Assembly: GCA_002269645.1 (NCBI GenBank)
Contig: NIVC01002022.1
Location: 62,001 to 126,000 of the forward strand
From: Macrostomum lignano
Lineage: Eukaryota
DNA: 64,000 bases
Direction: 5' to 3'
Positions 15,646-50,494 of this stretch are shown one piece after another. The translations under genes were made by a program, and so were the position numbers. Every line of letters starts with the position of its first letter. The stretch's first letter is position 1. The notes under the pieces are model-generated. The model ran no database searches and was not told the DNA's origin. It saw only the letters and a list, made by a program, of their open reading frames with translations.

Positions 15646-15770
15646 TACGACTATAGACATGATTAAGGTAAATATTCAATGCGATGTAATTATAAAGAAA
15701 ATAATAAATAGATTAGAAAGTCAGACGATAATAATTAAACGAATTCAATTACCATTGGAGACCAGAAACC

Positions 15771-17649
15771 TTAGACAGAGCCGGTAGCAGACTCCCGTTT
15801 ACTACCTCTAGCAGTCGGTGTGGGAACTTTACTAGCAGTTGAAGAGGCTGCAACAATCGGTCTATCGGATTCCGGATCGAAGTCTTTAGAATTCACTCGC
15901 AGCGTAGAACAATACAGCGGCGATAGCATAGCAGATTGCGGAGGCTTGCGACTGCCAGACACGGCTGTAACAGCCGCCGTAGGCTTCTTGACAGCGCCGG
16001 TGTGACTACCTGAAGTCGTTCTAGCCGGTGGCAGAGGCGGCTTAAACACTGGAGCCGATTTTTTAGTCGGCGAACCGCCCAACTGTGGTCGATTTTCGTC
16101 GGTAGCGGCGTTCGACACCCGCCGTTTAGTATTATTATCAACTCGATCAAAGTTGCCAGCCGGCAGCACGGTGGTGCTATCGAGTTTTTGAAAATTGCAA
16201 CCTATTTTGACGTCGATACAATTAGACGATGATGATATGTCGGCTACGCCGGCGCTTGTAGCATTGCTGAAAGCGGCTAGGGATGCTTGGTGCTGCTGCT
16301 GCTGCTGCTGGTAGCGAGTCTTATGCGGCTGTACAGCAATGCTGGCTCCGGTGCTGTTTAACTGCAAATCCCGATGATCGACAATGGCGGCTGCTCCGGC
16401 AGCTGAACGAGTTCGAATTGGTCGGTTGTGCTCCGCGGCACCAGCTGATTGAGCTGGGGCTGCTAGCAAGCGAGAAGGCGGACTCAAACCGATGCCAAGC
16501 CGATTGCAAGCGCTGCTACTCTCGTTGCTTATGTCTACCAGAGATCCCGTAGTTGAGGAGTCTTCCTGATCGGCCAGAGTGGAATCCTCATCATCATCAT
16601 CGTTGTTGTCGGCTGATTTTGAACGCCTGGACGAACGCCTTAGACGATAATGATTTGCTGACTGACGTCGCGACTGTTGCGGCGGCTGTTTCGGCGAGAC
16701 GGCGATGGCCACGGCTGGTTGGGTGCGACGTCGCTTAGGCTGCGACGGATTCTTACGGGCCGCCGCGGTGCCGGCGTCTCTGCTGGTCATGGCGGACAGA
16801 GAGGAGTCCGACGCTTCGCGATTGCGCCGTCTGGAGAGATTGGAGAGAGGGCTTGCTAGATTTTGGGAGATATTTGGATTAATGATTGTTGGGATTAGGG
16901 ATATTTGGATTAATGATTTTTGGGATTAGGGATATTTGGATCAGCGAATGTTGGGATTAGGGATATTTGGATTAGCGAATGTTGGGATTAGGGATATTTG
17001 GATTAATGATTGTTGGGATTAGGGATATTTGGATTAGCGAATATTGGGATTAGGGATATTTGGATTAGCGAATGTTGGGATTAGGGATATTTAGATCAGC
17101 GAATGTTGGGATTAGGGATATTTGGATTAGCGAATGTTGGTATTAGGGATATTTAGATCAGCGAATGTTGGGATTAGGGATATTTGGATTAGTGAATATT
17201 GGGATTAGGGATATTTGGATTAGCGAATATTGGGATTATGGATATTTAGTCTAACAAAATAATACAAGATCATTAAGCACTACTGATATATGTAATAGTT
17301 CTTACTTGCGAATACCCGGTACAAAACCGACGGCATCAGTAGCGTCCTCCTCGTTGTCATGGTGACAAGCCGTAGTAGAATCGCGCAGAATGCGAATCTG
17401 CTGAGCCTGGTGCTTAGTAACCGAGCGCTCATGACTGAGCAGAGCGGCAAGTCGAGAGTTGCTGCGAGTGAGACGATCGATCTCGGCGTCCCGCTGAGCA
17501 GCCAAGCCGTCTCTAAGACGATCGACAGCTTGATCAACAAATCGATGCAGATCAATTCGAAGCTGGTCAACTACTGCCGAGGAAGCAGTAGAAACAACAG
17601 ATGAAGCTGTCGAAGATTGATGCTGAGGCTGCTGGTGTTGCTGGGACAT
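15771..17649 (-). CDS. Coiled-coil, Ser/Ala/basic low-complexity protein, 2 exons, about 467 aa; candidate divergent shugoshin
   Basis: Exon 1 17306..17649 ends CGC AA|GTAAG (phase 2). Exon 2 15771..16830 follows a ctctccag acceptor and continues in frame (K-RRNREASD..). Exon composition is GC-rich like the other genes. The identity is tentative (see findings). Confidence 0.75.
16870..17245. repeat. Intronic minisatellite, 31-bp unit GTTGGGATTAGGGATATTTGGATTAGCGAAT
   Basis: Fills most of the 16831..17305 intron. Confidence 0.95.
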
Positions 17650-30122: not shown

Positions 30123-32527
30123 GTTTATAGTCTATGGAATAAAGGTCTGAGGGTAATAAGAGCAAAGGCAAGGGTGAAAGGAAGGAATTAGCTGCAAATA
30201 TTGAAGCTACGAATATTGAAACTCAAAACATAGCTGGTAGACCCTACTACAACACAAGGCCTACTATAGCATTTAATACCCTTTAATACCATTTAAGAAA
30301 CAAACTATTGACATTATAAACTTTTATTGATGTTTAACCATAAAAGTTCTTAACTTGTTCTGTTGCCCATTTGTTTTTATGCCATGTAAATGCACAATTT
30401 CAAACAGAAAATAATTAAACCTGCAAAACTAGGAAATTGCCGGCCAAGGGCAACTAGGAAAGTGTCTATAGGTGGTCTAGGTCTATCACATAGGTCCTTT
30501 CCCTTGCTTCGTTCAGTTGTAATTTATTTCAATACAAGTCTACATTTCCTAAGATAAGAAATATAGTCCAGAGTCCTAGTTAGGATAGGCTAGGTGCACA
30601 GTAAGAGAACAGACCTAGATAAAGGCCCTAATACCTGTTAGCTGTTTGTGTTCAGGCCGCAAATATCTATTAAAAGCTAAAAAGATTCTAGAAATTAGAA
30701 TGATAATTGCCTACATGTAGATTCGTAAGACTAAGACACAATTCGCTTTATTCTTGGAAACTGGTGGGTGCAGTTGTAGTGAGCTGTATTCCTTGTACAT
30801 GGCAGTAAGTAGTAGTAGTAATAGTAAGTAAGTTTGGCTCAGGCAAAAAGCCCGTTTGGCCAATATAAGTCGATGATTGTTTAAAAGGCTGGATACCTTT
30901 GTTGATGACACGATCGATCAAAACTTTACATGCAAATTTCAAATTTTCAGTAATAATATAAAAGTTAATAACAAAAGCCTAAAAAGAAAGTATACGTAAT
31001 TGTTTAACTATAAAATACTTTACAGCGTCTTTATACAAAAATAATTTTTGTTTGCGCTGCAAGCTTAAACAATCATTCAATATTTTGCTAAATGACAATG
31101 TAACTAAAATTCAAACAAACGGCATAACGGTTGCCGGTTGCAGTTCAACAAGATCAGTTCGAAGCTTTTCATATTGTCTGTTCCGTTTTCAGAATCGGTT
31201 TCAGAACCGTGTTCTGGTTCTGGAATTTGGATCGCGAACTTTTCTCGATCCATTGTCTTGTTTACACTTTAACAGTAAAATGTATTTGAAATCGTCTATT
31301 TCTATTATTGTTATTTTATTATTCTGTTTTTTTGCCATATCCAAGAGGGAAACAAAGTCAAGTAAAGACAAAATTAAATTGTAAAGACTGACAAACATAA
31401 AATGGGTTCGAAGATTTTCATTTTCCTACCGATTCTGGTTCTGGAATCAAAATTATTCTGGTTCTAGAACCAATCTTCGTGAGAAGTCTATAAATAAAAA
31501 TCTGTTTGGCAGTTTGGGGCGCTATTTATAAGAACTAGGCCTACTACTACTACTAAAGCCAAAATTTTACGAAAACGTCAAAAAGCTCATTTTTAATATT
31601 CAATTATGAAGTTTTGGGTTTATGAGGTTTAGGAAATTTAATCATTGATTGTGAAGCATAGTCTAGTGGGTATTTTGAGTTTTGTTTTTGCAAAATTTTA
31701 GTGTTAGACCTATGAAATAAATGGCTTGCTGATAAGTGATGACATGTGATGTGACATGTCGCAGTAATGGCTTTCTTTACTTAACATTTCTCAAAAGAGG
31801 TATAGAATACTTTTCTAAAGTTGATAGGTAATGTTAGGTTAATTTCATCTTGTTTGCATTATGTATACACTATAGAGTCCATAGGTTTTCCTGATTTTTG
31901 GTGCTATTAGGTGGCCTATGTGCTATGGCATTCTTTATATGCGCAACAGTCGGCCGATCTGGCCAACCAATTTGTCGCAAATTGGCGGCCAACCAAGGAA
32001 GTCACAAAAATGCCCACTTGAAAAAAACACCAAGTAGTAGTTACTAAGTAGCTGATGAGGCATTTTGGCTTTTTAAGACAGTCATAGTTACTCTTGCCAT
32101 TTACCTAAAGTTGCGTTAATTTTACTTTAGAGTTTTTTACATGTAAGTCTCATTTTTGGCTAAAAACTATATCACATTTTTGTTGAAACTAGGTCGCATG
32201 GCTGACTGAATTTTGGAAGCTGCACATGTATGAAGGCATTGATGTACATAACTTTGCCCAAATGGTTTTTATTGACATTAAACTGCCATTATAATTTATA
32301 TAACACGAATTCGTCTGCTAGCCAATAAGATTAGAGGAAGAAAAGGAGGGAAAGGGTGATGGAAACCTGCTTTAATCTTCTTTTAATGAATGATTTTCTC
32401 GCTGTATATAGTATAGGCTATATGTGTAGTGTAACAGTGTTATATAGTACATAAATATTCAGAATATGTAATACAATATGGTAACTGCACGACTCGTGAC
32501 TCGATCTCCTGATCTACAGTTAAAAAC

Positions 32528-32907
32528 GGGTCTCCCTAAAACACGCCCCACACCGCCCTGCAGCGCTACACATTAAAACAAATTGGACTATAACTGAAGA
32601 CAGCTCAAAATGCGTTTTCTGTTAAGCTTCAAAGTTTTTATTAAATTTAGTTTTTACTATGAAATATAAAATTCGGTGAATAATGAATGATATTAATAAT
32701 AATTATTAATAAAAACATAATTATTATAATTTAATAATGCAAACGAGAATATAAAAAATAATAATTATAATTATAATTATAATTAAAGATATTTATTTCA
32801 TTACTCTTACAACGAATAGTTTTCTTTGCAATCAAATACTGCATTGACAAAAAATGTTATAATGTGTAGCGGTTCAGGGTGGTGCGATGCGTTTTTTAGG
32901 GAGACCC
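32528..32907. mobile_element. MITE with about 50-bp TIRs and 9-bp TSD (Mutator-type)
   Basis: Termini GGGTCTCCCTAAAA...TTTTAGGGAGACCC with imperfect TIRs extending to the GCTACACATT motif. Perfect TSD GTTAAAAAC at 32519..32527 and 32908..32916. The interior is AT-rich. Confidence 0.85.
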
Positions 32908-33254
32908 GTTAAAAACGAGTACTTATTGTATTTCCTAAATTGCTAAAAATATGGTGTACCTAAAAATTAGGTACTGAGCTATTTCTGAAGTACATGATTA
33001 GTTCGCGTATTTTTTACATTAGACTTTTTTATTTCAACGCACTGAGAATATTACGTTTTAATTTGTTATACAGCTGGATGACTCTTAATTTTAACATATT
33101 TAACAAGAGCCTGGTAAAATGTGCGGATTTTGAACGCTTTGAGCTCTAATCCCCACTATTTTTGCCAAAAAACCTAATTTTGAAGTCATACTTGAACAAA
33201 AACTTTTTGATGGTTTGAATAGAGGTTTAAAAATGGAGTAATTCAAGTGAAAAT

Positions 33255-33490
33255 AAGAGTGTGAGAGGGTGAGTCAGAGAGTGGTGAGAGGGTGAGTGAG
33301 AGAGTGGCGAGAGGGTGAGAGGGTGAGTGGTGTGAGGGTGAGAGGGTGAGTAAGAGAGTGGCGAGAGGATGAGTGAGAGAGTGGCGAGAGGGTGAGAGGG
33401 TGAGTGGTGAGAGGGTGAGTAAGAGAGTGGCGAGAGGGTGAATGAGAGAGTGGCGAGAGGGTGAGTCAGAGAGTGGTGAGAGGGAGAGTT
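33255..33490. repeat. GA-rich minisatellite GAGAGGGTGAGTGAGAGAGTGGC
   Basis: Degenerate tandem units. Confidence 0.85.
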
Positions 33491-34465
33491 CATAAGATTA
33501 AGAATGTCTCCAAATTTGCAGGTTTAATTTATTGCCCAAGCTATCTATCGCAAGAAAAATCTGTTAGTGCGTAGCATGGGCTCCAAGATTATACATGTAG
33601 TAACATTAATAAAGTTGTCCAAGTGTGTAGCAATTAGCTGGCAATATAGAGAACAAATCATGTGTTGTGCATTGATAGCGGGGGGGGGGGTGCATTGTGT
33701 TGCTAAGCCGCTGCTATATGCATGGTTAGTCGAGACCAGTCGAGGAATTTACTAAGCCTTGAAGTTCTAGCAATGCTGTATGACGCAATTTGGTATGTGC
33801 AAAGATGCATGGGACTAAACTTGCAGAATAAGAACGAATCAATTATATAATAGAATAGAATAATAGAATAGAATTCTTATAGAATGAGTACCAACCACCA
33901 ATTCCAATCCATTTGTAAACAATCAATTGCTTCACTTATAAATTTCACTCACCAGTTTTAGCACGTCAGTAACACTAACACAAAACCTTATTGTTCTCCA
34001 CGTTGTGTTAGTTTGTTTTGTTTAACTGTTTCGTATTTAGCTTTTATATGAGCTATAGAAGAGAACAAAATGACATCACGAACTTATTATGCACCACACA
34101 TGTTATTTACGAGCATGCTGTAATTGCAATATATTTAACCTAAATCGTAATTACGTGAAAGACAAAGCCTTCCACTGCAATATGTATATCAAATGCCTTA
34201 ACCTACAGGCTAGGTGATAATAAATCATACACGATGCAAATACATACACATACAGTACGCACGCCTGCTTTCATTACTTTTATAATTAGTTCAAGATAAA
34301 AAATGGGAATCCCAAAAAAGTTATAATGGGATAGAAGCTGATAAAAGCTAAAGTGAATAAGTGAATCGATGAAATAGGTGAATGAATAAATGAATGAATG
34401 CGTGTAAGCTAGGGACTGGTTAGAGAACCGAGATGTTTGCAAAGTGTTCAGCAAATTCAGGAAAA

Positions 34466-37176
34466 TCACGCAGTAGACAATTTGGTGAACTTGGCTATGA
34501 GCTGGGTGCAAATAATCAGAAGGCGCAGGACGTCAGCTTCTTCGCGAGCGCTGCTCTCGAACTCACGCCAGGCAGATTGAAGCTTCTCCTCTCGTCGCCT
34601 GTAAACTGGCCTCACTCGCCGTGCGACACCGACTGAAGCTTGCAGCTGTTGAGCTTGCAGGACTGCCAATGTCGATTGCTGCGCCAGAAGGTCTGCCAAA
34701 GCGTACAAATTCAGGTTGCCTTTCCTGGCTCGTCGATTGAGGGCCAGGTGCCAGCCCTCGACTGAATTGTTTGTGCGCTCCCTCTGCCTGTAGACAGATA
34801 GTTTGTCCAGACTCCAGATACTGCTTGACAGCCATGTCTGCTCCACGTAGCGACACAGCCGCACTAATGCCTCGGAGTTTGCTGAATCCACCAGAGTTCC
34901 GAATGCAGTATAGATATGCGGCGCTGGCAGGTAGATGAGAGCCATCAGCTTCTTGCAAAAAAGCTGTGTCTCCTTATCGGTTGTGTAGGTCGCGGAAAGG
35001 CCAAGGTCTTGAATTTTTCGAAAAATGCTCTGTGCGAAGTGAAATGAGCATCCCTGCAGCTGAGCGTCGGGGCAGGTTTGATGCAAAGCCTCGCACATAG
35101 CTGCTTCAAAGTCAAGCACAGCTGCCGTGGGTCGAGCTCCTGTCAGCTCGATCAGCCACTCAAGTACATGAACGTAGTCGTGTTTTGATTTTCCAGACAT
35201 AAGGATGAAGCACAGAGGTACCTGCTTTTCCTTTCCGTCTTGATGGATAAGACCGTGAACTAAAAATGTACAGGATTGGATTAGTATTTGGTATTAAACG
35301 TTTAGTATAGTTGGATTTAGTATTTACTAGTTTAGTATCAGTAGTAAGATTTAGTTATATAGATTAGTATTAAAGGATTTAAAGCAAATTAAAAAGTAAC
35401 TCACCGGAATAAAGCTGCATAAACGGATTTTTAACAACGTAGAATGTTCCATCCATGAACCATTGATTCATAGTAGTCAGAATCTCTAGTTGCTCATCAG
35501 TGGCAAACAACAAATGGCGCTTATGGGTTCTGGCCATGGTGATGTCCACTTTAAGAAAGTTGGAGGGGAGGGCCAGCTCTTGAAGTTCAAATCGAAGATC
35601 ATGTGGATGATGAGGCTGGCTTCCTGCGCGATATCGGTTAGCGTTTCTAGCCAGCTGCTCAACTGCTGGAAGATTAGCGCCCTGCTCACCTCGCAGTGCC
35701 TGTGCTATTAGGGCGCTTTCAGCAATCTCTGCCGCTGATTCAAATCGGCATCGCTTTGCTTCGTGTTTCACTTCCCATTGAATTTCTCTTTTGAGGCCGC
35801 CAGCCATGTTGGGCTCGCAGATGTGTTGTCGGCTTACGTGAAAAGCGCCATCAATTGTCTCTTTAACGGAGCCGTTACAGGTCAAAGCACCGTTTCGAAC
35901 CACGCATTTCCAGTATTTACACCCAGCTTTACCTCCATTTCTTCCCAGAATATAACCACGGGAAGATACAAGCAAATCGCCGCCACGTTCGCTTACGCCC
36001 CGCTTTAGTTGAAACTGCTCTGGCTCCACGTGCATTACTTGAGCAGGAAGAGCTGTCGGTAGCGCGGCGAAAGCTGCTGGTGGATCGGCAAAAGCTGGCA
36101 GATCGGCGAAAGCTGCTGGTGGATCGGCAAAGGCTGCAGGCAGATCGGCGGGAGCTGCTGGTGGCTCGGCGAAAGCTGCTGGTGGATCGGCAAAGGCTGC
36201 AGGCAGATCGGCGGGAGCTGCTGGTGGCTCGGCGAAAGCTGCTGGTGGATCGGCAAAGGCTGCAGGCAGATCGGCGGGAGCTGCTGGTGGCTCGGCGAAA
36301 GCTGCTGGTGGATCGGCAAAGGCTGCAGGCAGATCGGCGGGAGCTGCTGGTGGCTCGGCGAAAGCTGCTGGTGGATCGGCAAAGGCTGCAGGCAGATCGG
36401 CGGGAGCTGCTGGTGGCTCGGCGAAAGCTGCTGGCGGATCGGCAAAGGCTGCAGGCAGATCGGCGGGAGCTGCTGGTGGCTCGGCGAAAGCTGCTGGTGG
36501 ATCGGCAAAGGCTGCAGGCAGATCGGCGGGAGCTGCTGGTGGCTCGGCGAAAGCTGCTGGCGGATCGGCAAAGGCTGCAGGCAGATCGGCGGGAGCTGCT
36601 GGTGGCTCGGCGAAAGCTGCTGGTGGATCGGCAAAGGCTGCAGGCAGATCGGCGGGAGCTGCTGGTGGCTCGGCGAAAGCTGCTGGTGGATCGGCAAAGG
36701 CTGCAGGCAGATCGGCGGGAGCTGCTGGTGGCTCGGCGAAAGCTGCTGGCGGATCGGCTGAACCCAGATCAGAAAACTGGCTTGTGCCAACCTTACCAGT
36801 ACCATTGAGCGTCTGCGTCTGTGTGTGAAAAATTTGTTATCGCTTTGTTATCACTACGAGATTTACATCAAGCTTAAACTTTGCAGCATGACCGAAAATA
36901 TCAACAATTACATGTACCATAGCATAGCATGTAAACAGTAATTCATATATAATAGAATCCTTTATACTACAGTAGCTGCTGCCAGTCTCTTACCTCATTT
37001 TTTCCAGTGCACTTTGAGCATTGCCAATTAAAGGAATGTTCCATCAAAGCATGGTATTCCTTTTGGCTCAAACCAGTGCCGCAAAGAAGGTGCTGCCATA
37101 GCTGACAAGAATCGCACTGTAAAGCATGCTGCCGATAACTCACTTCTTTCTGGCATTCAATGCACATGTCAGTCAT
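34466..37176 (-). CDS. Intact Mutator-like (MULE) transposase with N-terminal PHD finger, 21-aa repeat linker and FLYWCH domain, 3 exons, 796 aa
   Basis: Exon 1 36994..37176 encodes the C4-H-C3 PHD (CIEC..CDSC..HLLC..WQCSKC) and ends GAG|GTAAGA. Exon 2 35405..36818 (an alternative in-frame acceptor is at 36812) is open through the repeat in the ADPPAAF frame and holds KYWKC..C..H-x-C plus WFMDGTF, ending G|GTGAGT. Exon 3 34466..35259 gives LYS-V-HG..VLDFEAA..GCSFHF..RTNNSVEGWH. The total of 2391 nt is 797 codons with no internal stop. Confidence 0.9.
36080..36760 (-). repeat. Coding minisatellite, 63-bp unit, about 10.5 copies, within the MULE gene exon 2
   Basis: GGATCGGCAAAGG recurs every 63 bp from 36121 to 36688 and encodes ADPPAAFAEPPAAPADLPAAF. 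Confidence 0.97.
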
Positions 37177-37661
37177 ATTTCAGTAGCGCACACACTATAT
37201 TAAATGTGTTTTTGTTATAATTATTAAAATGAATCCTTTAACACGTTGAATATTTAACTATCATCTTATTGAAATGATGTTCAAAACGATGGCTTTATTA
37301 AAACTGTATACAAAAACTTTAGCTGGGGTGGATGCGATGTAATGAAGAATTGAGTGGTAGGAGCAGGCCTAATTTCATTGGTTGCCGCAGCAGACGAGTA
37401 GGCAAAACGTTGCAAACCAATTCGTCTGCTGAGCAGACGAACTGGCGGCAGACGAATTGACTGGCACCCGGTTGGCTGCATACTAGGTGACAAACACAAT
37501 AGGTTGGCTGACCAAGGGGTGAAAGCGTGAAGCCAAAGGAATAGATAGGCCTAAGTCATAATGTGGAATCATGCAATGCTATTTGCTTAGTTTGTTATAC
37601 AAATTGGCAATATCCTACATGTACATTTTTTAAACATTAGTTTAATGTCAATAAAAACCCA

Positions 37662-38066
37662 TTGGCGATCTTCCAGTTTGTTTTGCAATATTATTTTTGA
37701 GTTTGAAATGGTGCATCAACGTAGTGAAACAATAGAAAATGGTAGGCCTAGTACTTAGCTAGCCAGTTGATAGTCGAGCAGGTATCATATGTTGCTTTGT
37801 ACATATCATACAGAGGAAAGGCCTAGATTGTTAGGTTCAGCAGTTCTGCTGCAGGCCATACCTCGTTTGGTGGCAGAATAAAATTTGGTGCTGCTGTTTG
37901 ACTAGCCATGTTAAAGAAATTCGTGTAAATACAAGAGCAAGAGTCTAAGTAAAGTCAGTGAAATCAAAATGTCTTTAACAGTGCTATTTCGCGCGTGTCA
38001 TTATATTGATGTACCATTTCAAACTCAAAAATAATATCGCGAAACAAACTGGAAGATTGCTGCCAA
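37662..38066. repeat. Foldback/MITE-like inverted repeat (about 58-bp arms)
   Basis: 37662..37719 is an imperfect reverse complement of 38006..38066 (core CCATTTCAAACTCAAAAATAATAT..AAACAAACTGGAAGAT). No TSD was found. Confidence 0.7.
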
Positions 38067-39189
38067 CCAGTTGGCCAAAGTTATTTGCATATAGCATTAT
38101 GAAATCTTGGTTTAGTAAAATATAGGGTTTATAAAATTTCAATGTTGTGAAATTTTGATGTTAGGCCTATAAAGTTTTGACCATAAAAAACTGTCTTGAA
38201 ATTATAAAATCAGTTTTATAGAATGACCCTAAAATTAGATTTTGGCATTGCCAGTTGTTATTGTTATGATAGCTATATAATATTATAAATAGAGTAGAGA
38301 TGGTTATTTTTATGGTCATCACAGAAAGTATTATCTAAATAAAGTGAAAAAATTGCTGTGCAAATAATAAAAGATAGTTAAATTAAAGAAATAAGTGTTA
38401 TTAATATATCTAGCTGTCTATAGTGATTCTTGTCATTGTTCCAACTTTAGCTAGCTTTTTTAGGTTTTTGTTAACTAATTAGTGTATATAAAATATATTT
38501 TCCAAGACCATAAAAATAGCTATTTTTCTTCTTAAGCATAATAACTATAAAAAAAGTTTTGCTATTTATACAGTTATGATTTTTATAGGTAGAGATATTA
38601 AGACTTAAGTTAAAACCTGAAGCCCAAATGCCAAATAGTGTCCTATGCATTGACCATCAAAGTAACAATTTTGCTATTTATATAGTCACTGTAATAATAA
38701 CAACTGCCTTAAATTTTAGTATATGTAATACATAGCTATACCATACTATAAACAATAAGGGTAATGCATTATCTATATAAGAAAAGAAGATAGTTATTAA
38801 AAACAATTTTTCAATTTTTATGCAAAAGGATAGCTATCTAATCTAGATATCAATCAGTATAGTATAGTATATATATATATTTGATATAACAGTTTTTTTC
38901 ATATATATACAAGCTGTTGAAACCCGCGGATTTTGAACCCGGGGAATTCCAATCCCGGAACTACTTTTGCATGTATTCTGAAATCTAAGGCCATACACAA
39001 ACAAAAACTTGTTAATAGTTCGTAGTATAGAGGTAGACATAAAATGGAGTACATTCGTGTAAAATTAGGATTTGAGGCAAACATTTGATATTGTTGGCTG
39101 GGGTATTGTGCAGAATGTCAGGCAATGTCTGTCTGACTCTAAAACATGTATTGGCAAACTCTGGCCTTTCCCTGACTCTCCCTATGTCC

Positions 39190-39768
39190 CTTGGATCCTT
39201 TAAAATTTCTATCGTCTCTTCTGTTTCCTCTCTTCTCTCTCGTCCCTCGTCTCTCCTCTCTCCCCTCTTCTTTCGTATCTTCCCTCATCTCTCTTCTCTT
39301 TCATTTCTCTTATCTGATCTCTTTTCTCTTCTTTTATCTCTACCCTCCTCTCTCCTCTCTCCTCTCTACTTTTTCGTTTTCTCTCTCCTCTCCTCTCTCC
39401 TCTCTCCCCCTCATCTCTCTTCTCTTCCTTCTCCTCTCTATTTTTTTCTCTCTTCTCTTAACTCTCTCCTCTACTCACTCATCTCTCCCCTCTTCTCTCG
39501 TATCTTCCCTCATCTCTCTTCTCTTTTATCTCTCTTATCTCATCTCTTGTCTCTTCGTTTCTCTCTCCTCTCCTTTCTCCTTTCTACTTTTTCATTTTCT
39601 CTCTCCTCTCCTCTCTCCTCTCTCCCCCTCTCCTCTCTCCTCTACTCTCTCATCTCTCCCCTCTTCTCTCGTCTCTTCCCTCACCTCTTTTCTCTCTCGT
39701 CTTTGCTCTCTCATCATTCCTTTCACTTCTTTTATCTCTTATCTCTTATCTCTTCTCATTTCTCTCTG

Positions 39769-39848
<80 letters not shown>

Positions 39849-40720
39849 GCTCTCTCCTGTCCTGTCCCATCTGTCTTCTTTCTAATATCTCCCCTCTTTC
39901 CTCTCCTCTCTCGTCCTTTCCGCCAATTTCCCCTGTCCTCTCGATTCTCTTCCCTCCCCTCCTCTCTCCTCACTCACTTCTCATCTCTCCCTTGTCTCCA
40001 CATCTCACCTCATTTCTTATCTATCTCTCCACTTTTCTCTCTACTCTCCCATCTCTCGTCTGTTCACTCTCGTTTCTGCTCTCTCATCTCCTTTCTCTCA
40101 TCTGTCATCTTTACTCTTATATGTTCTCTCCGGTGTAGTCTTCTCTTTCCCCTCTTCTGACTCCTCTCTTTCCTTACTTCTCTTCCCTCTCCTCTACTCT
40201 CTCCCTCTATTCTCTTCTCTCGTCTTTGCACTCTGCTCTCTCTTCCTTCATCTTTCATCTCTACTCTTTCAGCTTTCCTTTCATCTCTCTCATCTCTACA
40301 ATCTCATCTTTTTCCTCTATCCTCCTCTTCCCTTTACTCTATCATCTCTCCTTTCTCCTCTCTTCTTTCGCAACTCGATCTCATCTCTCTCCTCTCTTCT
40401 CACTCCTCTCTCCCCCTCTTATCTCCTCTCTTCTCTATCCTTTCTAATCGCTCCTCTCAATCCTCTCTCATCTCCTCTCTGTTCTCTCTTGTCTACTCAT
40501 CTCTACTCTCTTCTCACTCTTCTCTACCCTCCTCTCTAATTTCCTCTTTGTTCTCTCATGTCTACTCATGTCTACTCTCTTCTCACTCTTCTCTACCCTC
40601 CTCTCTCATCTCCTCTCTGTTCTCTCATGTCTACTCATCTCTACTCTCTTCTCACTCTTTTCTACCCTCCTCTCTCATCGATTCTGTCTCATCTCTTAAC
40701 TCTTCTTTTTCTCCTTTTCA
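39190..40720. repeat. About 1.5-kb polypyrimidine (CT-rich) low-complexity tract including pure (CT)n at about 39773..39840
   Basis: Almost purely C/T on the plus strand, with internal block duplications. Confidence 0.92.
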
Positions 40721-44837: not shown

Positions 44838-47800
44838 TTCTGAATGTCTGTCTGTCTGTCTGTCTTTCTGTATGTATGTCTGTCTGCCTATCTGTCTGTC
44901 TATCTGTCCGTCTGTCTGTCTATCTGTCTTAGTCTCCGTCACAAAATATTTGTCTTGTCTGCTTTAGTCTGTTTAGTTTTTATCAGTCTGTCTGTGATGC
45001 ATCTGCGCTGTAGATGTACATTAGTTTGCTTGTTATGCGCACTATCGGCTTCTATCTGTGCATTTCTCTGCATTGCATTTGTCCCAGTCTTGCGAGTCCA
45101 TTCAGTGTCGCTGTGAACACATCTCCAGACCGAGCTGCTAGACGAGATGCTCTTCAGCGGCTTAGACGCCATCCTCATCAAAGTGGCCGCCTACGGCCTG
45201 TCGCCAAAGCGCCATCTGGGTCGCCGCCTTGTCGACATTCGCGACGAACTTGTGCGCCTGGCCGCTCCGGCCGCCGGCGGCCTGAGTCCGTGCGGCGAGG
45301 GCGGCGAATATGAGACCCTGGCGTTGGACTGTCCTCTGTTTAAGCACGGCCGAATTGTGCTTGACAACGGGCACTTGACTGCGGCGGGTACGGATAGTCG
45401 GGTGGTTGTGCATAGCGACGATGCTTTTGCTCCGGTGTGCTATTTGAAGCTGACTGGCTGTTGTCGGCTTGGCGAGCCCAAGGTAAGTTTGATGGTTGTA
45501 TTTCCTAATTTAGCTTGAATCCACGGTATCTCAGTGTAGCTTAGCTGTGATTGGTGCAGAGTCCATCTAATTTGGGAGTATCTCAGTGTAGCTTAGCTGT
45601 GATTGGTGCAGATTCAATCTAATTTGGGAGTATCTCAGTGTAGCTTGACTGTAATAGGTGCAGATTCAATCTAATTTGGGAGTATCTCAGTGTAGCTTAG
45701 CTGTGATTAGTGCAGATTCAATCTAATTTGGGAGTATCTCAGTGTAGCTTAGCTGTGATTGGTGCAGAGTCAATCTAATTTGGGAATATCTCAGTGTAGC
45801 TTGACTGTAATAGGTGCAGATCAGATTCAATCTAATTTGGGAGTATCTCAGTGTAGCTTGACTGTAATAGGTGCAGACTCAATCTAATTTGGGAGTATCT
45901 CAGTGTAGCTTAGCTGTGATTGGTGCAGAGTCAATCTAATTTGGGAGTATCTCAGTGTAGCTTAGCTGTGATTGGTGCAGATTCAATCTAATTTGGGAGT
46001 ATCTCAGTGTAGCTTAGCTGTGATTGGTGCAGATTCAATCTAATTTGGGAGTATCTCAGTGTAGCTTAGCTGTGATTGGTGCAGATTCAATCTAATTTGG
46101 GAGTATCTCAGTGTAGCTTAGCTGTGATTGGTGCAGATTCAATCTAATTTGGGAGTATCTCAGTGTAGCTTAGCTGTGATTGGTGCAGATTCAATCTAAT
46201 TTGGGAGTATTTCAGTGTAGCTTAGCTGTAATAGGTGCAGATTCAATCTAATTTGGGAGTATCTCAGTGTAGCTTAGCTGTAATAGGTGCAGATTCAATC
46301 TAATTTGGGAGTATCTCAGTGTAGCTTAGCTGTGATTGGTGCAGACTCAATCTAATTTGGGAGTATCTCAGTGTAGCTTAGCTGTGATTGGTGCAGATTC
46401 AATCTAATTTGGGAGTATCTCAGTGTAGCTTAGCTGTGATTGGTGCAGATTCAATCTAATTTGGGAGTATCTCAGTGTAGCTTAGCTGTGATTGGTGCAG
46501 ATTCAATCTAATTTGGGAGTATCTCAGTGTAGCTTAGCTGTAATAGGTGCAGATTCAATCTAATTTGGGAGTATCTCAGTGTAGCTTAGCTGTAATAGGT
46601 GCAGATTCAATCTAATTTGGGAGTATCTCAGTGTAGCTTAGCTGTGATTGGTGCAGACTCAATCTAATTTGGGAGTATCTCAGTGTAGCTTAGCTGTGAT
46701 TGGTGCAGATTCAATCTAATTTGGGAGTATCTCAGTGTAGCTTAGCTGTGATTGGTGCAGATTCAATCTAATTTGGGAGTATCTCAGTGTAGCTTAGCTG
46801 TGATTGGTGCAGATTCAATCTAATTTGGGAGTATTTCAGTGTAGCTTAGCTGTGATTGGTGCAGATTCAATCTAATTTGGGAGTATCTCAGTGTAGCTTA
46901 GCTGTAATAGGTGCAGATTCAATCTAATTTGGGAGTATCTCAGTGTAGCTTGACTGTAATAGGTGCAGATTCAATCTAATTTGGGAGTATCTCAGTGTAG
47001 CTTAGCTGTGATTGGTGCAGATTCAATCTAATTTGGGAGTATCTCAGTGTAGCTTAGCTGTGATTGGTGCAGATTCAATCTAATTTGGGAGTATCTCAGT
47101 GTAGCTTAGCTGTGATTGGTGCAGAGTCAATCTAATTTGGGAGTATCTCAGTGTAGCTTAGCTGTGATTGGTGCAGATTCAATCTAATTTGGGAGTATTT
47201 CAGTGTAGCTTAGCTGTAATAGGTGCAGATTCAATCTAATTTGGGAGTATCTCAGTGTAGCTTAGCTGTAATAGGTGCAGATTCAATCTAATTTGGGAGT
47301 ATCTCAGTGTAGCTTAGCTGTGATTGGTGCAGACTCAATCTAATTTGGGAGTATCTCAGTGTAGCTTAGCTGTGATTGGTGCAGATTCAATCTAATTTGG
47401 GAGTATTTCAGTGTAGCTTAGCTGTGATTGGTGCAGATTCAATCTAATTTGGGAGTATCTCAGTGTAGCTTAGCTGTGATTGGTGCAGATTCAATCTAAT
47501 TTGGGAGTATCTCAGTGTAGCTTAGCTGTGATTGGTGCAGATTCAATCTAATTTGGGAGTATCTCAGTGTAGCTTAGCTGTGATTGGTGCAGATTCAATC
47601 TAATTTGGGAGTATTTCAGTGTAGCTTAGCTGTGATTGGTGCAGATTCAATCTAATTTGGGAGTATCTCAGTGTAGCTTAGCTGTAATAGGTGCAGATTC
47701 AATCTAATTTGGGAGTATCTCAGTGTAGCTTGACTGTAATAGGTGCAGATTCAATCTAATTTGGGAGTATCTCAGTGTAGCTTAGCTGTGATTGGTGCAG

Positions 47801-50494
47801 ATTCAATCTAATTTGGGAGTATCTCAGTGTAGCTTAGCTGTGATTGGTGCAGATTCAATCTAATTTAAGAGATCTCAGTGTAGCTCAGTTGTGATTGGTG
47901 CAGAGTCAATCTAATTTAAGAGATCTCAGTGTAGCTTAGCTGTGATTGGTGCAGAGTCAATCTAATTTAAGAGATCTCAGTGTAGCTCAGTTGTGATTGG
48001 TGCAGAGTCAATCTAATTTAAGAGATCTCAGTGTAGCTTAGCTGTGATTGGTGCAGAGTCAATCTAATTTAAGAGATCTCAGTGTAGCTTAGCTGTGATT
48101 GGTGCAGAGTCAATCTAATTTAAGAGATCTCAGTGTAGCTCAGTTGTGATTGGTGCAGAGTCAATCTAATTTAAGAGATCTCAGTGTAGCTTAGCTGTGA
48201 TTGGTGCAGAGTCAATCTAATTTAAGAGATCTCAGTGTAGCTCAGTTGTGATTGGTGCAGAGTCAATCTAATTTAAGAGATCTCAGTGTAGCTCAGTTGT
48301 GATTGGTGCAGAGTCAATCTAATTTAAGAGATCTCAGTGTAGCTCAGTTGTGATTGGTGCAGAGTCAATCTAATTTAAGAGATCTTAGTGTAGCTCAGTT
48401 GTGATTGGTGCAGAGTCAATCTAATTTGGGAGTATCTCAGTGTAGCTTAGCTGTGATTGGTGCAGATTCAATCTAATTTAAGAGATCTCAGTGTAGCTCA
48501 GTTGTGATTGGTGCAGAGTCAATCTAATTTGGGAGTATCTCAGTGTAGCTCAGTTGTGATTGGTGCAGAGTCAATCTAATTTAAGAGATCTCAGTGTAGC
48601 TCAGTTGTGATTGGTGCAGAGTCAATCTAATTTAAGAGATCTCAGTGTAGCTCAGTTGTGATTGGTGCAGAGTCAATCTGTACTATTATATACTTTGTTT
48701 CTGATAAAATTGATCACTATTCTCAGGCTGGTCTCGAAGAGTTCAGTGCAAAGCAACTATCGCCTATCGATCGCATATCGCCCGCTGTAATCGAACGAGA
48801 ATTTCAAATCGACGCCAAAAACTATCCCAATTCACGCGGAGGTTCGTTGTATTGTGATGATGATTCAAACGATTTGCCTTCATTGAAATTGTCAGTTATC
48901 AATGTTCAAGTTGCTGAACAAAGCGGCGAAATCTCTGTTGCTGAGATGGCCAAGTTATTGATGTCGAAAGCTAATGCTGCAATCCAGGCTGCTGGAGGTG
49001 AGCAGTCGGCTGAGATGCGACCTCTGCTGTGTGTTTTGACAGTAAGTTATAGTTTATGTCGTTGGTTTACACATTATATATTGATTGAAGGGTGTTTGTA
49101 GCTTAGTGATTAGAGCGTTTGACTCAGGACTGAAAGGTCGTGGGTTCGATTCTTGACCAAATAGAAACAATTTGTGCCCTTATCGAGCAAGACGCTTAAC
49201 TCTGCATTGCTTCAGTTGCCTCAAAATGGGGTAAGCTAGAATAAACTGGGGTAATTGAGGGTGTGTGTGGCGACCCTTCAGTCCTTGGACTGAATAGCCG
49301 TACGCAGCCTTCAGATGCGCCGCGTAATAGCTGCGACTGAGTTGTCGGTTGCACATTATCTTTCCATTAAAGCTGGTGTAATCAAGTATTATAGTTATTA
49401 TTGAGTGCTCAACTGTCTCTTAATTTTCCAAATCCCCAAAGCCCATACAAAACCTCACTGCAAACATTTCCGCTAGTGAAAACTACTCATAGTAGTTTAA
49501 TTAAAAGAAAGAACTTCTAAGAAATCGTTCTCCTTGGTTTTTCGTTTTCATCAAGCAGTGCAACAACGATCGTATACTCGCTCACACAGGGTGTACAGCA
49601 CAATAAGTCTTGAATTAAAAACTATTCCAGGTGCCAGACATGTCATCATTCGCGTTAGTCAACTATGTCTATGGTTCGCCAGAGCTCGGCTTTGCCAGCC
49701 GGCCGGGCTATCGATCGCCGCCAGCGCGAGCTTGCGTTGAACTGGCAACAGCAGCGTCTGAAGTGATGTCGGCTTCAATCCTAGTCTTAGAAGAGGATAA
49801 GGGATCCGATGCCTCAACAGTGGCCGCTATGCACGTGCGCAGCCGGAGTCACTGGGCCCCGGCCAACATTGGTCCGTATAGTCAGTGTATTGCATTAGCT
49901 AATCATCGATTGTTATTAATATCCGGTCAGATTGCTATGGATCCGGCTACGCTGGAGATTCCACTAGGCTCCAGTGCTCAGTGGCAAGCCGATTTGTCCT
50001 TGCGTCATACTCTACGAGTAGCCCGTGCCAATGGTTATCAAGGACGCTTTGGTAGTGGTAGTAACGACTGTAGTTTGTTTATCTGCTTTGGTTTAGATGC
50101 CGACTGTCTGTCTGCCGGTGTTGATAGCTTTCAACGATTGATCTGTCGGGAAAATTCCAGTCGTCTAGTGCTGCCTGCACTCTGCACCGGTCTGCCTAAA
50201 GGTGCCAAAGTCGAATGGCTCACCTTTTTAGTTAATGCCAACGATGATACATTAACTACTAGCATTGAATATGTTGACGAATTGGATGATGTCACGACGC
50301 TAATTTCCCGTTGGCAACGAGGTGCTAAAAATAGTCTGGCAGTGTGTCTGGTCAATGAGACTGCACTAGCTGGGCAGAGCTACGATCTATCATCTAGCAT
50401 TGCCGGCTTTCCTGTACTGCAGATCCGTTGCCATGGGTTTCTAAGCCAACGATATGGCAACTCTGCTGCCGTTGTTGCTAGGCTGAATTTCTAA
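43608..50494 (+). CDS. DPH6: Diphthine--ammonia ligase with C-terminal RidA/YjgF-like domains, 5 exons, about 660 aa
   Basis: Exons 43608..43859, 44355..44552, 45129..45482, 48727..49041 and 49631..50494, all phase-0 GT-AG joins. Motifs: [105 protein letters not shown]-like [10 protein letters not shown]. The Dph6-RidA fusion is established in fungi, plants and many invertebrates. Confidence 0.94.
44040..44330. repeat. Minisatellite, 28-bp unit TCATTTAGTGAGTGCCATTTCCCTTAGG (DPH6 intron 1)
   Basis: About 10 tandem copies. Confidence 0.93.
44650..44940. repeat. (CTGT)n-rich microsatellite (DPH6 intron 2)
   Basis: Degenerate GTCT tetramer runs. Confidence 0.9.
45528..48677. repeat. Large minisatellite, 52-bp unit GTATCTCAGTGTAGCTTAGCTGTGATTGGTGCAGATTCAATCTAATTTGGGA, about 60 copies (DPH6 intron 3)
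   Basis: Occupies nearly the whole 45483..48726 intron. It switches to a TTTAAGAGATC variant after about 47865. Confidence 0.98.
49090..49355 (+). mobile_element. tRNA-derived CORE-like SINE in DPH6 intron 4
   Basis: A box TGTAGCTTAGTGATTAG and B box GGGTTCGATTC, then TGTGCCCTTATCGAGCAAGACGCTTAACTCTGCATTGCTTCAGTTGCCTCAAAATGGGG, which resembles the remembered MIR/CORE domain. Perfect hairpin TTCAGTCC-TT-GGACTGAA near the 3' end. Confidence 0.7.

What the first reader, a model, noticed from the sequence alone, without database searches (positions are those of the whole stretch)
34466..37176. Intact, spliced PHD-FLYWCH-MULE transposase gene with no visible pair of TIRs: a chromatin-reading or domesticated transposase
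Seen: three exons join without a stop into 796 aa. The order is a canonical C4-H-C3 PHD finger on its own exon, a Pro/Ala linker, a FLYWCH-type finger, and a complete MULE catalytic core (MDGTF, LDFEAA, CSFH, RTNNSVE). The ORF track splits this into unrelated ORFs. Its exons are CpG-rich although the surrounding DNA is decayed and CpG-poor. Known: PHD fingers read histone H3 tails, and FLYWCH-MULE transposases exist in animals and have been domesticated. Inference: this is either an active element that uses a histone reader for target selection (conceptually like the RAG2 PHD) or a host-recruited gene. I cannot say whether this exact architecture is already described.
Basis: partly seen in the sequence, partly recalled or inferred. 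Interest (0 to 1): 0.7.

Follow-up and report, generated by a model that had tools for sequence, protein, structure and literature searches.

The report
Flatworm Mutator transposon with PHD finger
This is an intact transposase gene of a Mutator-like "jumping gene" in the flatworm Macrostomum lignano; its histone-reader-like PHD finger is standard for a transposon family found across many animals, and the copy does have inverted-repeat ends, so it is an ordinary though nicely preserved member.

Summary
Three minus-strand exons (37176-36994, 36818-35405, 35259-34466) join through GT-AG introns into a 796-aa protein: a C4HC3 PHD finger, a Pro/Ala linker, a FLYWCH-type finger and a complete MULE DDE core. 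The window is Macrostomum lignano (Mlig_3_7).

Two points of the reading do not hold.
- **Inverted repeats exist.** A 43/44-nt inverted repeat (91%) brackets the gene at 32242-32284 and 37639-37663+38072-38090. The right arm is split by a 408-bp MITE. Mirrored ATTCGTCTGC motifs lie inside both ends, and the flanking 9-mers match 6/9.
- **The architecture is not special to this locus.** At least 27 divergent protein clusters share the same N-terminal finger and MULE core. They include amphioxus, limpet, dog-whelk and annelid proteins. One relative sits in three different flanks with 34-nt TIRs, so it is mobile.

The finger is specifically Pygopus-type (profile E 2.5e-11; model TM 0.82-0.87). 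It keeps the H3-tail groove residues but not the two K4 cage walls.

Best reading: an aged copy of an ordinary transposon family that still encodes an apparently functional transposase. Domestication is not excluded, because copy number in the genome could not be measured. The linker is a 63-bp x 10.4 coding minisatellite. The CpG contrast is weak.

The parts
32233..32241 (.). Candidate target-site duplication, left copy (AAGGCATTG)
   Evidence: Matches the 9-mer after the right arm (ATAGCATTA) at 6 of 9 positions. This is weak evidence on its own.
32242..32284 (.). Left arm of the terminal inverted repeat (3' end relative to the gene)
   Evidence: 27-nt core at 93%. The 21-nt core occurs only twice in the window, with 0.01 expected. 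The arm extends to 43 nt, 40/44 matched, after the MITE is removed from the partner.
32309..32318 (-). Subterminal motif GCAGACGAAT (reads ATTCGTCTGC on the + strand), 22 nt inside the left arm
   Evidence: One of only five sites (<=1 mismatch) in 64 kb. All five lie just inside the two arms.
32525..32910 (.). Nested MITE-like foldback in the 3' non-coding part
   Evidence: 56-nt inverted arms, 86% complementary, 274 nt apart.
33256..33489 (.). Minisatellite (23/46/69-bp period) between the stop codon and the left arm
   Evidence: TRF. The position resembles the 'minisatellite after the transposase ORF' noted for Rehavkus and aphid Phantom elements. The window is full of minisatellites, so this may be coincidence.
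34466..35259 (-). Exon 3: second half of the DDE core (D582, C603xxH606, E700), C-terminal helical region and stop codon (34466-34468)
   Evidence: The Pfam MULE hit spans the intron-2 junction.
35260..35404 (-). Intron 2 (GT..AG, 145 nt, 24% G+C)
   Evidence: The junction is seamless against intronless relatives.
35405..36818 (-). Exon 2: linker, FLYWCH-type finger (35817-35993; W364, C366, C375, H393, C395), first catalytic Asp (D517, 35451-35453)
36103..36758 (-). Coding minisatellite, 63 bp x 10.4, 99% identical. It encodes the 21-aa unit PPAAFAEPPAAPADLPAAFAD within the linker.
   Evidence: TRF score 1291. Translation.
36819..36993 (-). Intron 1 (GT..AG, 175 nt), lying in the linker
   Evidence: Phase 0. 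In relatives the PHD and the rest are joined in a single ORF.
36994..37176 (-). Exon 1: start codon and Pygopus-type PHD finger (C5..C56 = 37009-37164)
37390..37457 (.). Cluster of four GCAGACGAAT-like motifs upstream of the start codon. Three are in mirror orientation to the left-end copy.
   Evidence: Inverted pair I15.
37639..37663 (.). Right arm of the terminal inverted repeat, inner part
37664..38071 (.). MITE inserted into the right arm (66-nt inverted arms, 88%; flanked by AACCCATT / AACCAGTT)
38072..38090 (.). Right arm of the terminal inverted repeat, outer part
   Evidence: It continues the match to the left arm once the MITE is removed.
38091..38099 (.). Candidate target-site duplication, right copy (ATAGCATTA)

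Best explanation
The locus is one copy, about 5.85 kb (32242-38090), of a Mutator-like (MULE) cut-and-paste DNA transposon in Macrostomum lignano. It carries a single three-exon gene for a 796-aa transposase. The transposase belongs to a clade found across many animals, whose standard layout is: N-terminal Pygopus-type PHD finger, low-complexity repeat-prone linker, FLYWCH (WRKY-GCM1 fold) zinc finger, and DDE/RNase-H-like catalytic core with a CxxH motif.

**Shown**
- The gene is intact and keeps the family's conserved residues.
- Imperfect terminal inverted repeats bracket it, with mirrored subterminal motifs.
- The right repeat is split by a later MITE insertion, and the 3' non-coding part holds other nested repeats.
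- Relatives with the same protein layout are mobile.

**Inferred mechanism**
- The FLYWCH finger binds the subterminal ATTCGTCTGC-type repeats.
- The DDE core (D517, D582, E700) excises and reinserts the element, producing about 9-bp target duplications as in other MULEs.
- The PHD finger docks on the N-terminal tail of histone H3 and ties the transposase to chromatin, which may bias target choice. Its groove residues are kept. The two K4-cage walls are not, so the preferred methylation state is unknown.

This copy is probably old and impaired in cis, but it could supply transposase in trans.
For: - **Gene model and catalytic residues:**
- **Source organism:** names GCA_002269645.1 contig NIVC01002022.1. 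tie that accession to M. lignano Mlig_3_7.
- **Ends:** inverted repeat. All five GCAGACGAAT sites of the window lie just inside the two arms, with three of the four right-hand sites mirrored. The flanking 9-mers match 6/9.
- **Family:** collinear full-length alignment at 30-38% identity. There are 30,296 representatives at E<=1e-3 and 3,308 at E<=1e-30. 27 of the best 150 carry the N-terminal PHD. Named members come from amphioxus, limpet, annelid and dog-whelk.
- **Mobility of relatives:** the P0002 element has a 34-nt TIR at 97% made of repeated TTCGTCACAC units. The identical protein sits behind three different left flanks that diverge exactly at GAATACCAGTCAC. The P0006 element has 51-nt terminal repeats with repeated AATTCACGCCC units.
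- **Constraint:** this protein keeps 48 of 50 positions invariant in 15 relatives, which is within the family range.
- **PHD finger:** the family profile hits Pygo PHDs at E 2.5e-11, against 7e-5 for the next PHD. The AF2 model has pLDDT 79.6. Foldseek's top hits are all Pygo, with TM 0.82-0.87 and rmsd 1.1-1.6 A. Mapped on hPygo1 residues (Fiedler 2008), the following are kept: W366->W27, V350->V12, A356->A18, I357->L19, E360->D22, Y379->Y41, W390->W51.
Against: - Only one copy could be examined, so the ends are not confirmed by a second insertion.
- The inverted repeat is short (43 nt) and imperfect (91%). The candidate target duplication is only 6/9.
- The subterminal motifs are asymmetric: one copy 22 nt from the left arm, four copies about 180-250 nt from the right arm. 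The right cluster lies 215-280 nt upstream of the ATG and could be a promoter element instead.
- The MITE boundaries used to extend the repeat were chosen to maximise the match.
- The gene has two introns, while the relatives examined are intronless.
- No protein more than about 41% identical exists in the collections. A multi-copy family in this genome is therefore not shown.
- An intact ORF next to diverged repeats and nested insertions is what purifying selection on a host gene would also give.
- The K4-cage walls Y341 and D352 of Pygo are D3 and Y14 here and vary in the family. Methyl-lysine reading is not secured.
Confidence: 0.62

Rival explanations
1. Domesticated (host-recruited) transposase. 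An old MULE insertion was immobilised, and its PHD-FLYWCH-DDE protein is now kept by selection for a host function such as a chromatin-bound DNA-binding factor or nuclease.
For: - The ORF is intact and keeps family-conserved residues. Meanwhile its surroundings show decay: the right repeat is split by a MITE whose own arms are only 88% alike, the repeat arms are at 91%, and the 3' part holds nested repeats.
- It has two introns, unlike the intronless relatives.
- There is one copy in 64 kb and no close paralogue in the protein collections.
- A rough estimate of my own, not a tool result: if the 9% arm divergence were all post-insertion decay, about 1.7 kb of unique coding sequence would be expected to have acquired stops or frameshifts.
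Against: - Terminal repeats and mirrored subterminal motifs are still recognisable. MULE repeats need not be perfect from the start.
- All three catalytic residues are retained.
- The coding minisatellite is 99% identical between units. This indicates recent unconstrained expansion inside the protein.
- No orthologue or annotated gene product for this locus is on record.
- Every relative examined in its context looks like a transposon.
Confidence: 0.22
2. The element is a transposon as in the best explanation, but the PHD finger does not read histones. It would bind a protein partner on its rear face, as Pygo binds BCL9 HD1. Alternatively it would bind DNA or the transposon ends, as reported for the cysteine-rich PHD-like domain of piggyBac-type transposases.
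For: - The two side walls of Pygo's K4me cage are not conserved: Y341->D3 and D352->Y14 here, and variable (D/F/N and A/N) in relatives.
- In Pygo, histone binding is assisted by a cofactor.
- PHD-like fingers of other transposases have non-histone ligands. This rests on the title and abstract of PMC8086355 and on my own knowledge, and was not tested here.
Against: Residues that matter for H3-tail binding in Pygo are invariant or conservatively replaced across the family: W366, V350 and A356 shown by mutation, plus T3-pocket residues I357 and Y379 and acidic E360.
Confidence: 0.35
3. A dead relic. The ORF is open only because the copy is young, and it is neither expressed nor active.
For: - No gene product from this locus is on record in the collections, although neighbouring genes of the same contig are.
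- The right repeat is interrupted.
Against: - Splice sites, start, stop and all conserved motifs are intact.
- Absence from a protein collection is weak evidence about expression.
Confidence: 0.12

Closest known systems
Unnamed metazoan MULE clade with PHD_Pygo + FLYWCH + MULE (for example Branchiostoma floridae XP_035686596.1, Patella caerulea KAK6182207.1, Nucella lapillus ACOMHN_053027, Dimorphilus gyrociliatus CAD5126447.1)
   Same: Full-length collinear alignment with the same domain order. The PHD ligands, FLYWCH ligands, DDE triad and CxxH are the same, and the linker is repeat-prone.
   Different: Identity is only 30-41%. This copy has two introns, a 219-aa Pro/Ala minisatellite in the linker, and HxC instead of HxH as the last FLYWCH ligand pair (shared with P0078). 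The database entries are unnamed or 'uncharacterized'. I found no paper describing the clade.
Phantom-type animal MULEs (Dupeyron et al. 2019, group 20)
   Same: Animal hosts including Platyhelminthes, a FLYWCH finger in some members, 8-10-bp duplications, TIRs of 18-613 bp, and a minisatellite after the transposase ORF in aphid members.
   Different: No PHD finger is listed for Phantom. Placement of this protein in that phylogeny was not tested.
Rehavkus (Repbase; used as outgroup of MULEs)
   Same: PHD finger in the transposase, a minisatellite before the 3' TIR, TIRs of 26-412 bp, 9-bp duplications, invertebrate hosts.
   Different: There is no detectable similarity between this protein or its relatives and six Rehavkus DDE regions: phmmer gave no hit at E<=10, and the Rehavkus profile scored 0.7 bits. 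The catalytic motifs differ: DATGS / TDFS / CAAH / NNAIERYF against MDGTF / LDFEAA / CSFH / NNSVEGWH.
MULE transposases with a WRKY-GCM1 finger and a C-terminal PHD (Ciona, C. elegans; Babu et al. 2006)
   Same: A MULE core combined with a WRKY-GCM1-superfamily DNA-binding finger and a PHD finger. The authors proposed it as a widespread architecture.
   Different: There the PHD is C-terminal and two classic zinc fingers precede the WRKY-GCM1 domain. Here the PHD is N-terminal and of the Pygopus type.
Pygopus PHD finger (hPygo1/2, fly Pygo)
   Same: It is the best sequence and fold match of the finger. The pocket-divider Trp, signature Trp, cavity base V/A, T3-pocket I/L and Y, and the acidic residue after the third Cys are kept.
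   Different: The cage walls Y341 and D352 are not kept. There is no Pygo N-terminal homology domain. The BCL9-binding face was not examined. The protein context is a transposase.
RAG2 PHD and piggyBac-family cysteine-rich domains
   Same: They are analogies for a zinc finger of the PHD kind attached to a cut-and-paste recombinase. This rests on my own knowledge and on titles and abstracts.
   Different: The superfamilies differ (Transib, piggyBac). The RAG2 finger sits on a separate subunit. The piggyBac domain is C-terminal and is reported to bind DNA. No homology to them was tested.

Membership tests
MULE / Mutator superfamily | DDE catalytic core matching the MULE transposase domain | tested here: met
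   PF10551 scores 52.8 bits against a cut-off of 27.6, E 5.6e-14. D517, D582 and E700 lie in family-invariant columns.
MULE / Mutator superfamily | C/DxxH motif about 20 residues after the second Asp | tested here: met
   C603-S-F-H606 lies 21 residues after D582 and is invariant in the alignment.
MULE / Mutator superfamily | Terminal inverted repeats | tested here: inconclusive
   A 43/44-nt pair at 91% brackets the gene. Only one copy is available, and the right arm is interrupted.
MULE / Mutator superfamily | Target-site duplication of 8-11 bp (usually 9) | tested here: inconclusive
   The flanking 9-mers AAGGCATTG / ATAGCATTA match 6/9.
MULE / Mutator superfamily | Multiple copies or evidence of mobility in the host genome | not testable with these tools
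   No searchable copy of the M. lignano genome was available. There is one copy in the window. Mobility is shown only for a relative.
FLYWCH zinc finger (WRKY-GCM1 superfamily) | Match to PF04500 above the curated cut-off | tested here: not met
   12.4 bits against 23.6 for this protein. The homologous stretch passes in P0004 (29.7), P0006 (26.4), P0007 (24.5) and P0002 (24.3).
FLYWCH zinc finger (WRKY-GCM1 superfamily) | W-x-C ... C ... H-x-H/C metal ligands in register | tested here: met
   W364, C366, C375, H393 and C395 align with the relatives' W-x-C...C...H-x-H.
Pygopus-type PHD finger (Pfam PF27108 PHD_Pygo) | C4HC3 ligands and the signature Trp two residues before the seventh ligand | tested here: met
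   C5, C8, C21, C24, H29, C32, C53, C56 and W51 are invariant in the PHD-bearing relatives aligned.
Pygopus-type PHD finger (Pfam PF27108 PHD_Pygo) | Closer to Pygo than to other PHD fingers, in sequence and in fold | tested here: met
   Profile E 2.5e-11 for Pygo against 7e-5 for the next PHD. Foldseek ranks 1-7 are Pygo, TM 0.81-0.86. PF27108 is on record for relatives. The model itself is not in the local Pfam copy, so this protein could not be scored against it.
Pygopus-type PHD finger (Pfam PF27108 PHD_Pygo) | H3-tail groove: pocket-divider Trp, cavity base Val/Ala, T3 pocket, acidic anchor | tested here: met
   W27, V12, A18, L19, Y41 and D22 correspond to hPygo1 W366, V350, A356, I357, Y379 and E360.
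Pygopus-type PHD finger (Pfam PF27108 PHD_Pygo) | K4me cage walls Tyr341 and Asp352 (EVND loop) | tested here: not met
   D3 and Y14 occupy these positions here, and they vary in relatives.
Pygopus-type PHD finger (Pfam PF27108 PHD_Pygo) | Binding of methylated H3 tail peptide | not testable with these tools
   This needs ITC or a pull-down.
Rehavkus | Transposase related in sequence to Rehavkus DDE regions | tested here: not met
   No phmmer hit at E<=10. The profile of six Rehavkus sequences scores 0.7 bits for this protein.
Rehavkus | PHD finger plus a minisatellite before the 3' TIR | tested here: inconclusive
   Both are present (exon 1; 33256-33489). However, minisatellites are everywhere in this window, with 55 TRF rows.
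Domesticated transposase gene | Loss of transposon ends | tested here: not met
   Inverted repeats and subterminal motifs are still recognisable, although the right arm is split.
Domesticated transposase gene | Syntenic orthologues under purifying selection; single copy per haploid genome | not testable with these tools
   No Macrostomum genomes are searchable here. No relative above about 41% identity was found.

The most novel reading that the evidence does not exclude
A whole animal clade of Mutator-like transposases carries a true Pygopus-type histone H3-tail reader at its N-terminus and uses it to choose chromatin targets. That would be a built-in equivalent of the RAG2 PHD. The specific Pygo likeness would then reflect shared ancestry between the Wnt cofactor's finger and a transposon domain. 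Within that reading, this intron-bearing M. lignano copy with a broken end could be a step towards domestication.
Probability: 0.2. Interest if true: 0.7.

Novelty: new member of a known kind. Interest (0 to 1): 0.38.

Why it matters
For this locus alone, little changes. It adds an apparently unannotated, well-preserved MULE transposase gene to the M. lignano repeat catalogue, and it corrects the impression of a TIR-less oddity.

At the family level the result is more useful. A large MULE clade spanning several animal phyla has a Pygopus-type PHD finger fused to its DNA-binding and catalytic domains. I found no description of it in the papers searched. Maize Mu elements are known to favour gene 5' ends and open chromatin (my own knowledge, not checked here). 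A transposase with its own H3-tail reader would be a directly testable mechanism for chromatin-guided integration. It could also be a starting point for targeted large-cargo vectors. The specific likeness to Pygopus raises an evolutionary question about where that Wnt-pathway finger came from.

Tried and rejected
- **Whole-protein homologue search:** Repeating without the linker worked.
- **Exact look-ups:** The exon-3 ORF is not on record. So no other M. lignano copy could be fetched, and copy number stays unknown.
- **Nucella loci for reading target duplications:** not on record.
- **Logan contig of the closest relative P0001:** it shows no terminal repeats within its 3.5 kb.
- **P0006 element:** it has foldback-like ends, but I could not find a matching target duplication.
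- **Rehavkus membership:** considered because of the PHD and the minisatellite. Rejected on sequence.
- **PDB sequence search with the family profile:** it found only PHD fingers and no solved MULE transposase.
- **Literature searches:** nothing found for MULEs in M. lignano or for an N-terminal PHD on transposases.
- **CpG argument:** recomputed and dropped.
- **A shared TCGTC core** between this element's subterminal motif and that of the P0002 element was noted. It is too short to weigh.
- **Not done:** placement in the Dupeyron et al. phylogeny.
Full report
**Source and setting**

An exact-protein look-up of a neighbouring ORF places the window on contig NIVC01002022.1 of assembly GCA_002269645.1, with window position x equal to record position x + 62000. 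Three papers identify that accession as Mlig_3_7, the genome of the flatworm Macrostomum lignano. The window holds ordinary host genes:
- a DAO-type oxidoreductase exon;
- proteasome subunit exons;
- a diphthamide-synthase/L-PSP gene;
- a 447-aa ACBP gene.

Minisatellites are everywhere, with 55 TRF rows scoring 150 or more. The finding lies in an A+T-rich gap between genes.

**The observation**

On the minus strand, exons 37176-36994, 36818-35405 and 35259-34466 are joined by two GT..AG introns of 175 and 145 nt. They give 2391 nt, which is 796 codons plus a stop. The mechanical ORF list does split the gene.

Pfam assigns MULE clearly (52.8 bits, cut-off 27.6). For this protein alone, PHD (17.3 vs 24) and FLYWCH (12.4 vs 23.6) fall below their cut-offs. 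Both calls become secure through relatives, as described below.

- The 'Pro/Ala linker' is a 63-bp x 10.4 tandem repeat at 99% identity (36103-36758). It encodes a 21-aa unit that is itself three 7-aa sub-repeats.
- The CpG argument does not hold. CpG o/e is 0.35, 0.85-0.91 and 0.79 for exons 1, 2 and 3. The non-coding DNA on either side is at 0.78-0.79 and the left outside flank at 0.71. Only the CT-rich block to the right is low, at 0.45. The contrast is in G+C content.

**Relatives and architecture**

A search with the whole protein failed, probably because linker words filled the candidate cap. Without the linker, 25 proteins matched at 32-45% identity, many from the gastropod Nucella lapillus. 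Their sequences show the same N-terminal C4HC3 finger, a variable acidic or proline-rich linker, a FLYWCH finger and the MULE core. Seven sequences align collinearly end to end. In that alignment the intron-2 junction (MQLYS|VHGL) is seamless and intron 1 falls in the linker. This supports the splice model, because the relatives examined encode everything in one ORF.

A profile search of 1.84 billion cluster representatives found 30,296 relatives at E<=1e-3 and 3,308 at E<=1e-30. Of the best 150, 27 carry the N-terminal finger, including 15 of the 46 that are at least 550 aa. Named members come from Branchiostoma floridae, Patella caerulea and Dimorphilus gyrociliatus. They are annotated only as uncharacterized or 'MULE domain-containing'.

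FLYWCH passes Pfam's cut-off in four relatives at the homologous position. This protein keeps W364, C366, C375, H393 and C395. It also keeps 48 of 50 positions that are invariant in 15 relatives, which is within the family's own range. The closest relative is only about 36-41% identical, so no M. lignano paralogue is present in the collections.

**The finger**

A profile of six family fingers matches Pygopus PHD fingers in the PDB at E 2.5e-11. The next PHD finger (KMT2C) scores 7e-5. The precomputed Pfam label on the relatives' fingers is PF27108 'PHD_Pygo'. An AlphaFold2 model of exon 1 (pLDDT 79.6) has Pygo1, Pygo2 and fly Pygo PHD fingers as its best Foldseek matches, with TM 0.82-0.87, rmsd 1.1-1.6 A and 30-38% identity.

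I mapped the residues that Fiedler et al. 2008 defined for hPygo1 through the HMMER alignment.

| hPygo1 residue | Role | Here | Kept? |
|---|---|---|---|
| W366 | pocket divider | W27 | yes |
| V350 | cavity base | V12 | yes |
| A356 | cavity base | A18 | yes |
| I357 | T3 pocket | L19 | conservative |
| Y379 | T3 pocket | Y41 | yes |
| E360 | acidic anchor | D22 | conservative |
| W390 | PHD signature Trp | W51 | yes |
| Y341 | K4 cage wall | D3 | no |
| D352 | K4 cage wall | Y14 | no |

W366, V350 and A356 were each shown by mutation to be required for binding. The two cage-wall positions also vary among relatives. H3-tail binding is therefore plausible, but the methyl-lysine preference cannot be read off.

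**The ends**

A 27-nt inverted repeat (93%) lies at 32258-32284 and 37639-37665. Its 21-nt core occurs exactly twice in the window, against 0.01 expected.

Directly next to the right arm begins a foldback with 66-nt arms at 88% (37665-37730 / 37995-38060). Removing 37664-38071 extends the match to 43/44 nt with 40 matches (32242-32284 against 37639-37663 + 38072-38090). So a MITE inserted into the right arm.

The 9-mers outside the arms, AAGGCATTG and ATAGCATTA, agree at 6 of 9 positions. That is suggestive only.

All five sites of GCAGACGAAT (<=1 mismatch) in the 64 kb lie just inside the arms. One is at 32309-32318 and four are at 37390-37457. Three of the four are in mirror orientation to the left one.

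The 3' non-coding part (32285-34465) is swollen by three features:
- a second foldback at 32525-32910;
- a fragment of a dispersed repeat (33089-33265, similar to 38894-39076);
- a minisatellite at 33256-33489.

**Are relatives transposons?**

Yes. The element encoding P0002 is a 3.15-kb unit. Its 34-nt terminal repeats are 97% complementary and are built from repeated GTCAyTTCGTCACAC units, with more copies inside both ends. The identical protein is found behind three different left flanks that diverge exactly at GAATACCAGTCAC. The element encoding P0006 has 51-nt terminal repeats with a repeated AATTCACGCCC unit, and each end is folded back on itself. Terminal repeats with reiterated 10-15-nt motifs are thus the family's habit. 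The M. lignano copy fits that pattern loosely.

**What it is and how it most likely works**

The best-supported reading (about 0.6) is an aged copy of an ordinary MULE family that still encodes an apparently functional transposase.

By inference from the family and from what is known of MULEs:
- the FLYWCH finger recognises the subterminal repeats;
- the DDE core with its CxxH motif performs cut-and-paste with about 9-bp duplications;
- the PHD finger ties the enzyme to histone H3 tails.

The split right arm and the diverged arms suggest this copy is impaired in cis.

The main rival (about 0.2) is domestication. The intact ORF and the introns in a decayed setting argue for it. The retained ends and catalytic residues, the freshly expanded coding minisatellite and the lack of any orthologue argue against it. 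A mechanistic rival is that the finger binds a protein partner or DNA rather than histones.

**Comparison with what is known**

- Dupeyron et al. 2019 list a PHD finger only for Rehavkus, together with a minisatellite before the 3' TIR and 9-bp duplications. Six Rehavkus DDE regions taken from their supplement show no similarity to this protein or its relatives, and they have different catalytic motifs. The element is therefore not a Rehavkus.
- Their Phantom group (animal MULEs, some with FLYWCH, aphid members with a minisatellite after the ORF) is the nearest named group by description. That placement was not tested.
- Babu et al. 2006 noted MULE transposases with a WRKY-GCM1 finger and a C-terminal PHD in Ciona and C. 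elegans. PHD plus MULE is therefore precedented, but with a different position and finger type.
- I found no paper describing the N-terminal Pygo-type arrangement, although databases hold many such proteins.

**Verdict**

The 'no TIR' premise and the CpG argument fail. The architecture is family-wide, not a peculiarity of this locus.

I file it as a new member of a known kind. Interest is moderate to low for the locus itself and somewhat higher for the undescribed Pygo-type PHD clade it belongs to.

Noticed in passing
window 1-64000 (e.g. 45526-48679, 14744-15646, 9616-10337, 5020-5729): The window is saturated with minisatellites of 18-80-bp period, giving 55 TRF rows with score >=150. The largest is 52 bp x 60.8 at 96% identity. 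Many lie between exons of host genes.
   Followed up: no
window 37664-38071 and 32525-32910: Two unrelated MITE-like foldbacks. The first has 66-nt arms (88%) and splits the transposon's right repeat, flanked by AACCCATT / AACCAGTT. The second has 56-nt arms (86%) and sits in the 3' non-coding part.
   Followed up: partly
window 33089-33265 and 38894-39076: Two copies of a dispersed repeat fragment in direct orientation, 68% identical over 187 nt. One lies inside the element and one outside it. Each is followed by purine- or pyrimidine-rich repeats.
   Followed up: partly
window 39215-40676: A 1.5-kb CT-rich low-complexity block. It gives long spurious ORFs on the + strand and the lowest CpG o/e of the neighbourhood.
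   Followed up: no
window 36103-36758 (protein residues 84-313): The 21-aa linker unit is three 7-aa sub-repeats (PPAAFAE / PPAAPAD / LPAAFAD). Similar D-[LIV]-P-x-x-[FL]-x-D strings recur in the linkers of distant relatives, for example P0042 DLPPPLDFAD x3 and P0001 DVPPPFMD. This may be a short linear motif multiplied by minisatellite expansion.
   Followed up: partly
window 35817-35825 (H393-I-C395): The last FLYWCH ligand pair is H-x-C here and in relative P0078, but H-x-H in the other relatives. Babu et al. 2006 describe an 'HxC' WRKY-GCM1 family that is also tied to MULEs.
   Followed up: no
window 15771-16790 (-): A 339-aa ORF with 55% G+C and CpG o/e 1.2, similar to host exons. It has no Pfam match.
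   Followed up: no
L009:8906-9114 and L009:12600-12819: In the relative encoding P0006, each transposon end is itself a roughly 210-nt foldback: a 51-nt repeat, a spacer of about 107 nt, then the inverted repeat. The ends therefore look like MITEs.
   Followed up: partly
P0026 (1885 aa): A relative with one N-terminal PHD finger followed by nine tandem copies of the FLYWCH-plus-helical segment and no catalytic core. It is a candidate DNA-binding derivative of this transposase family.
   Followed up: no
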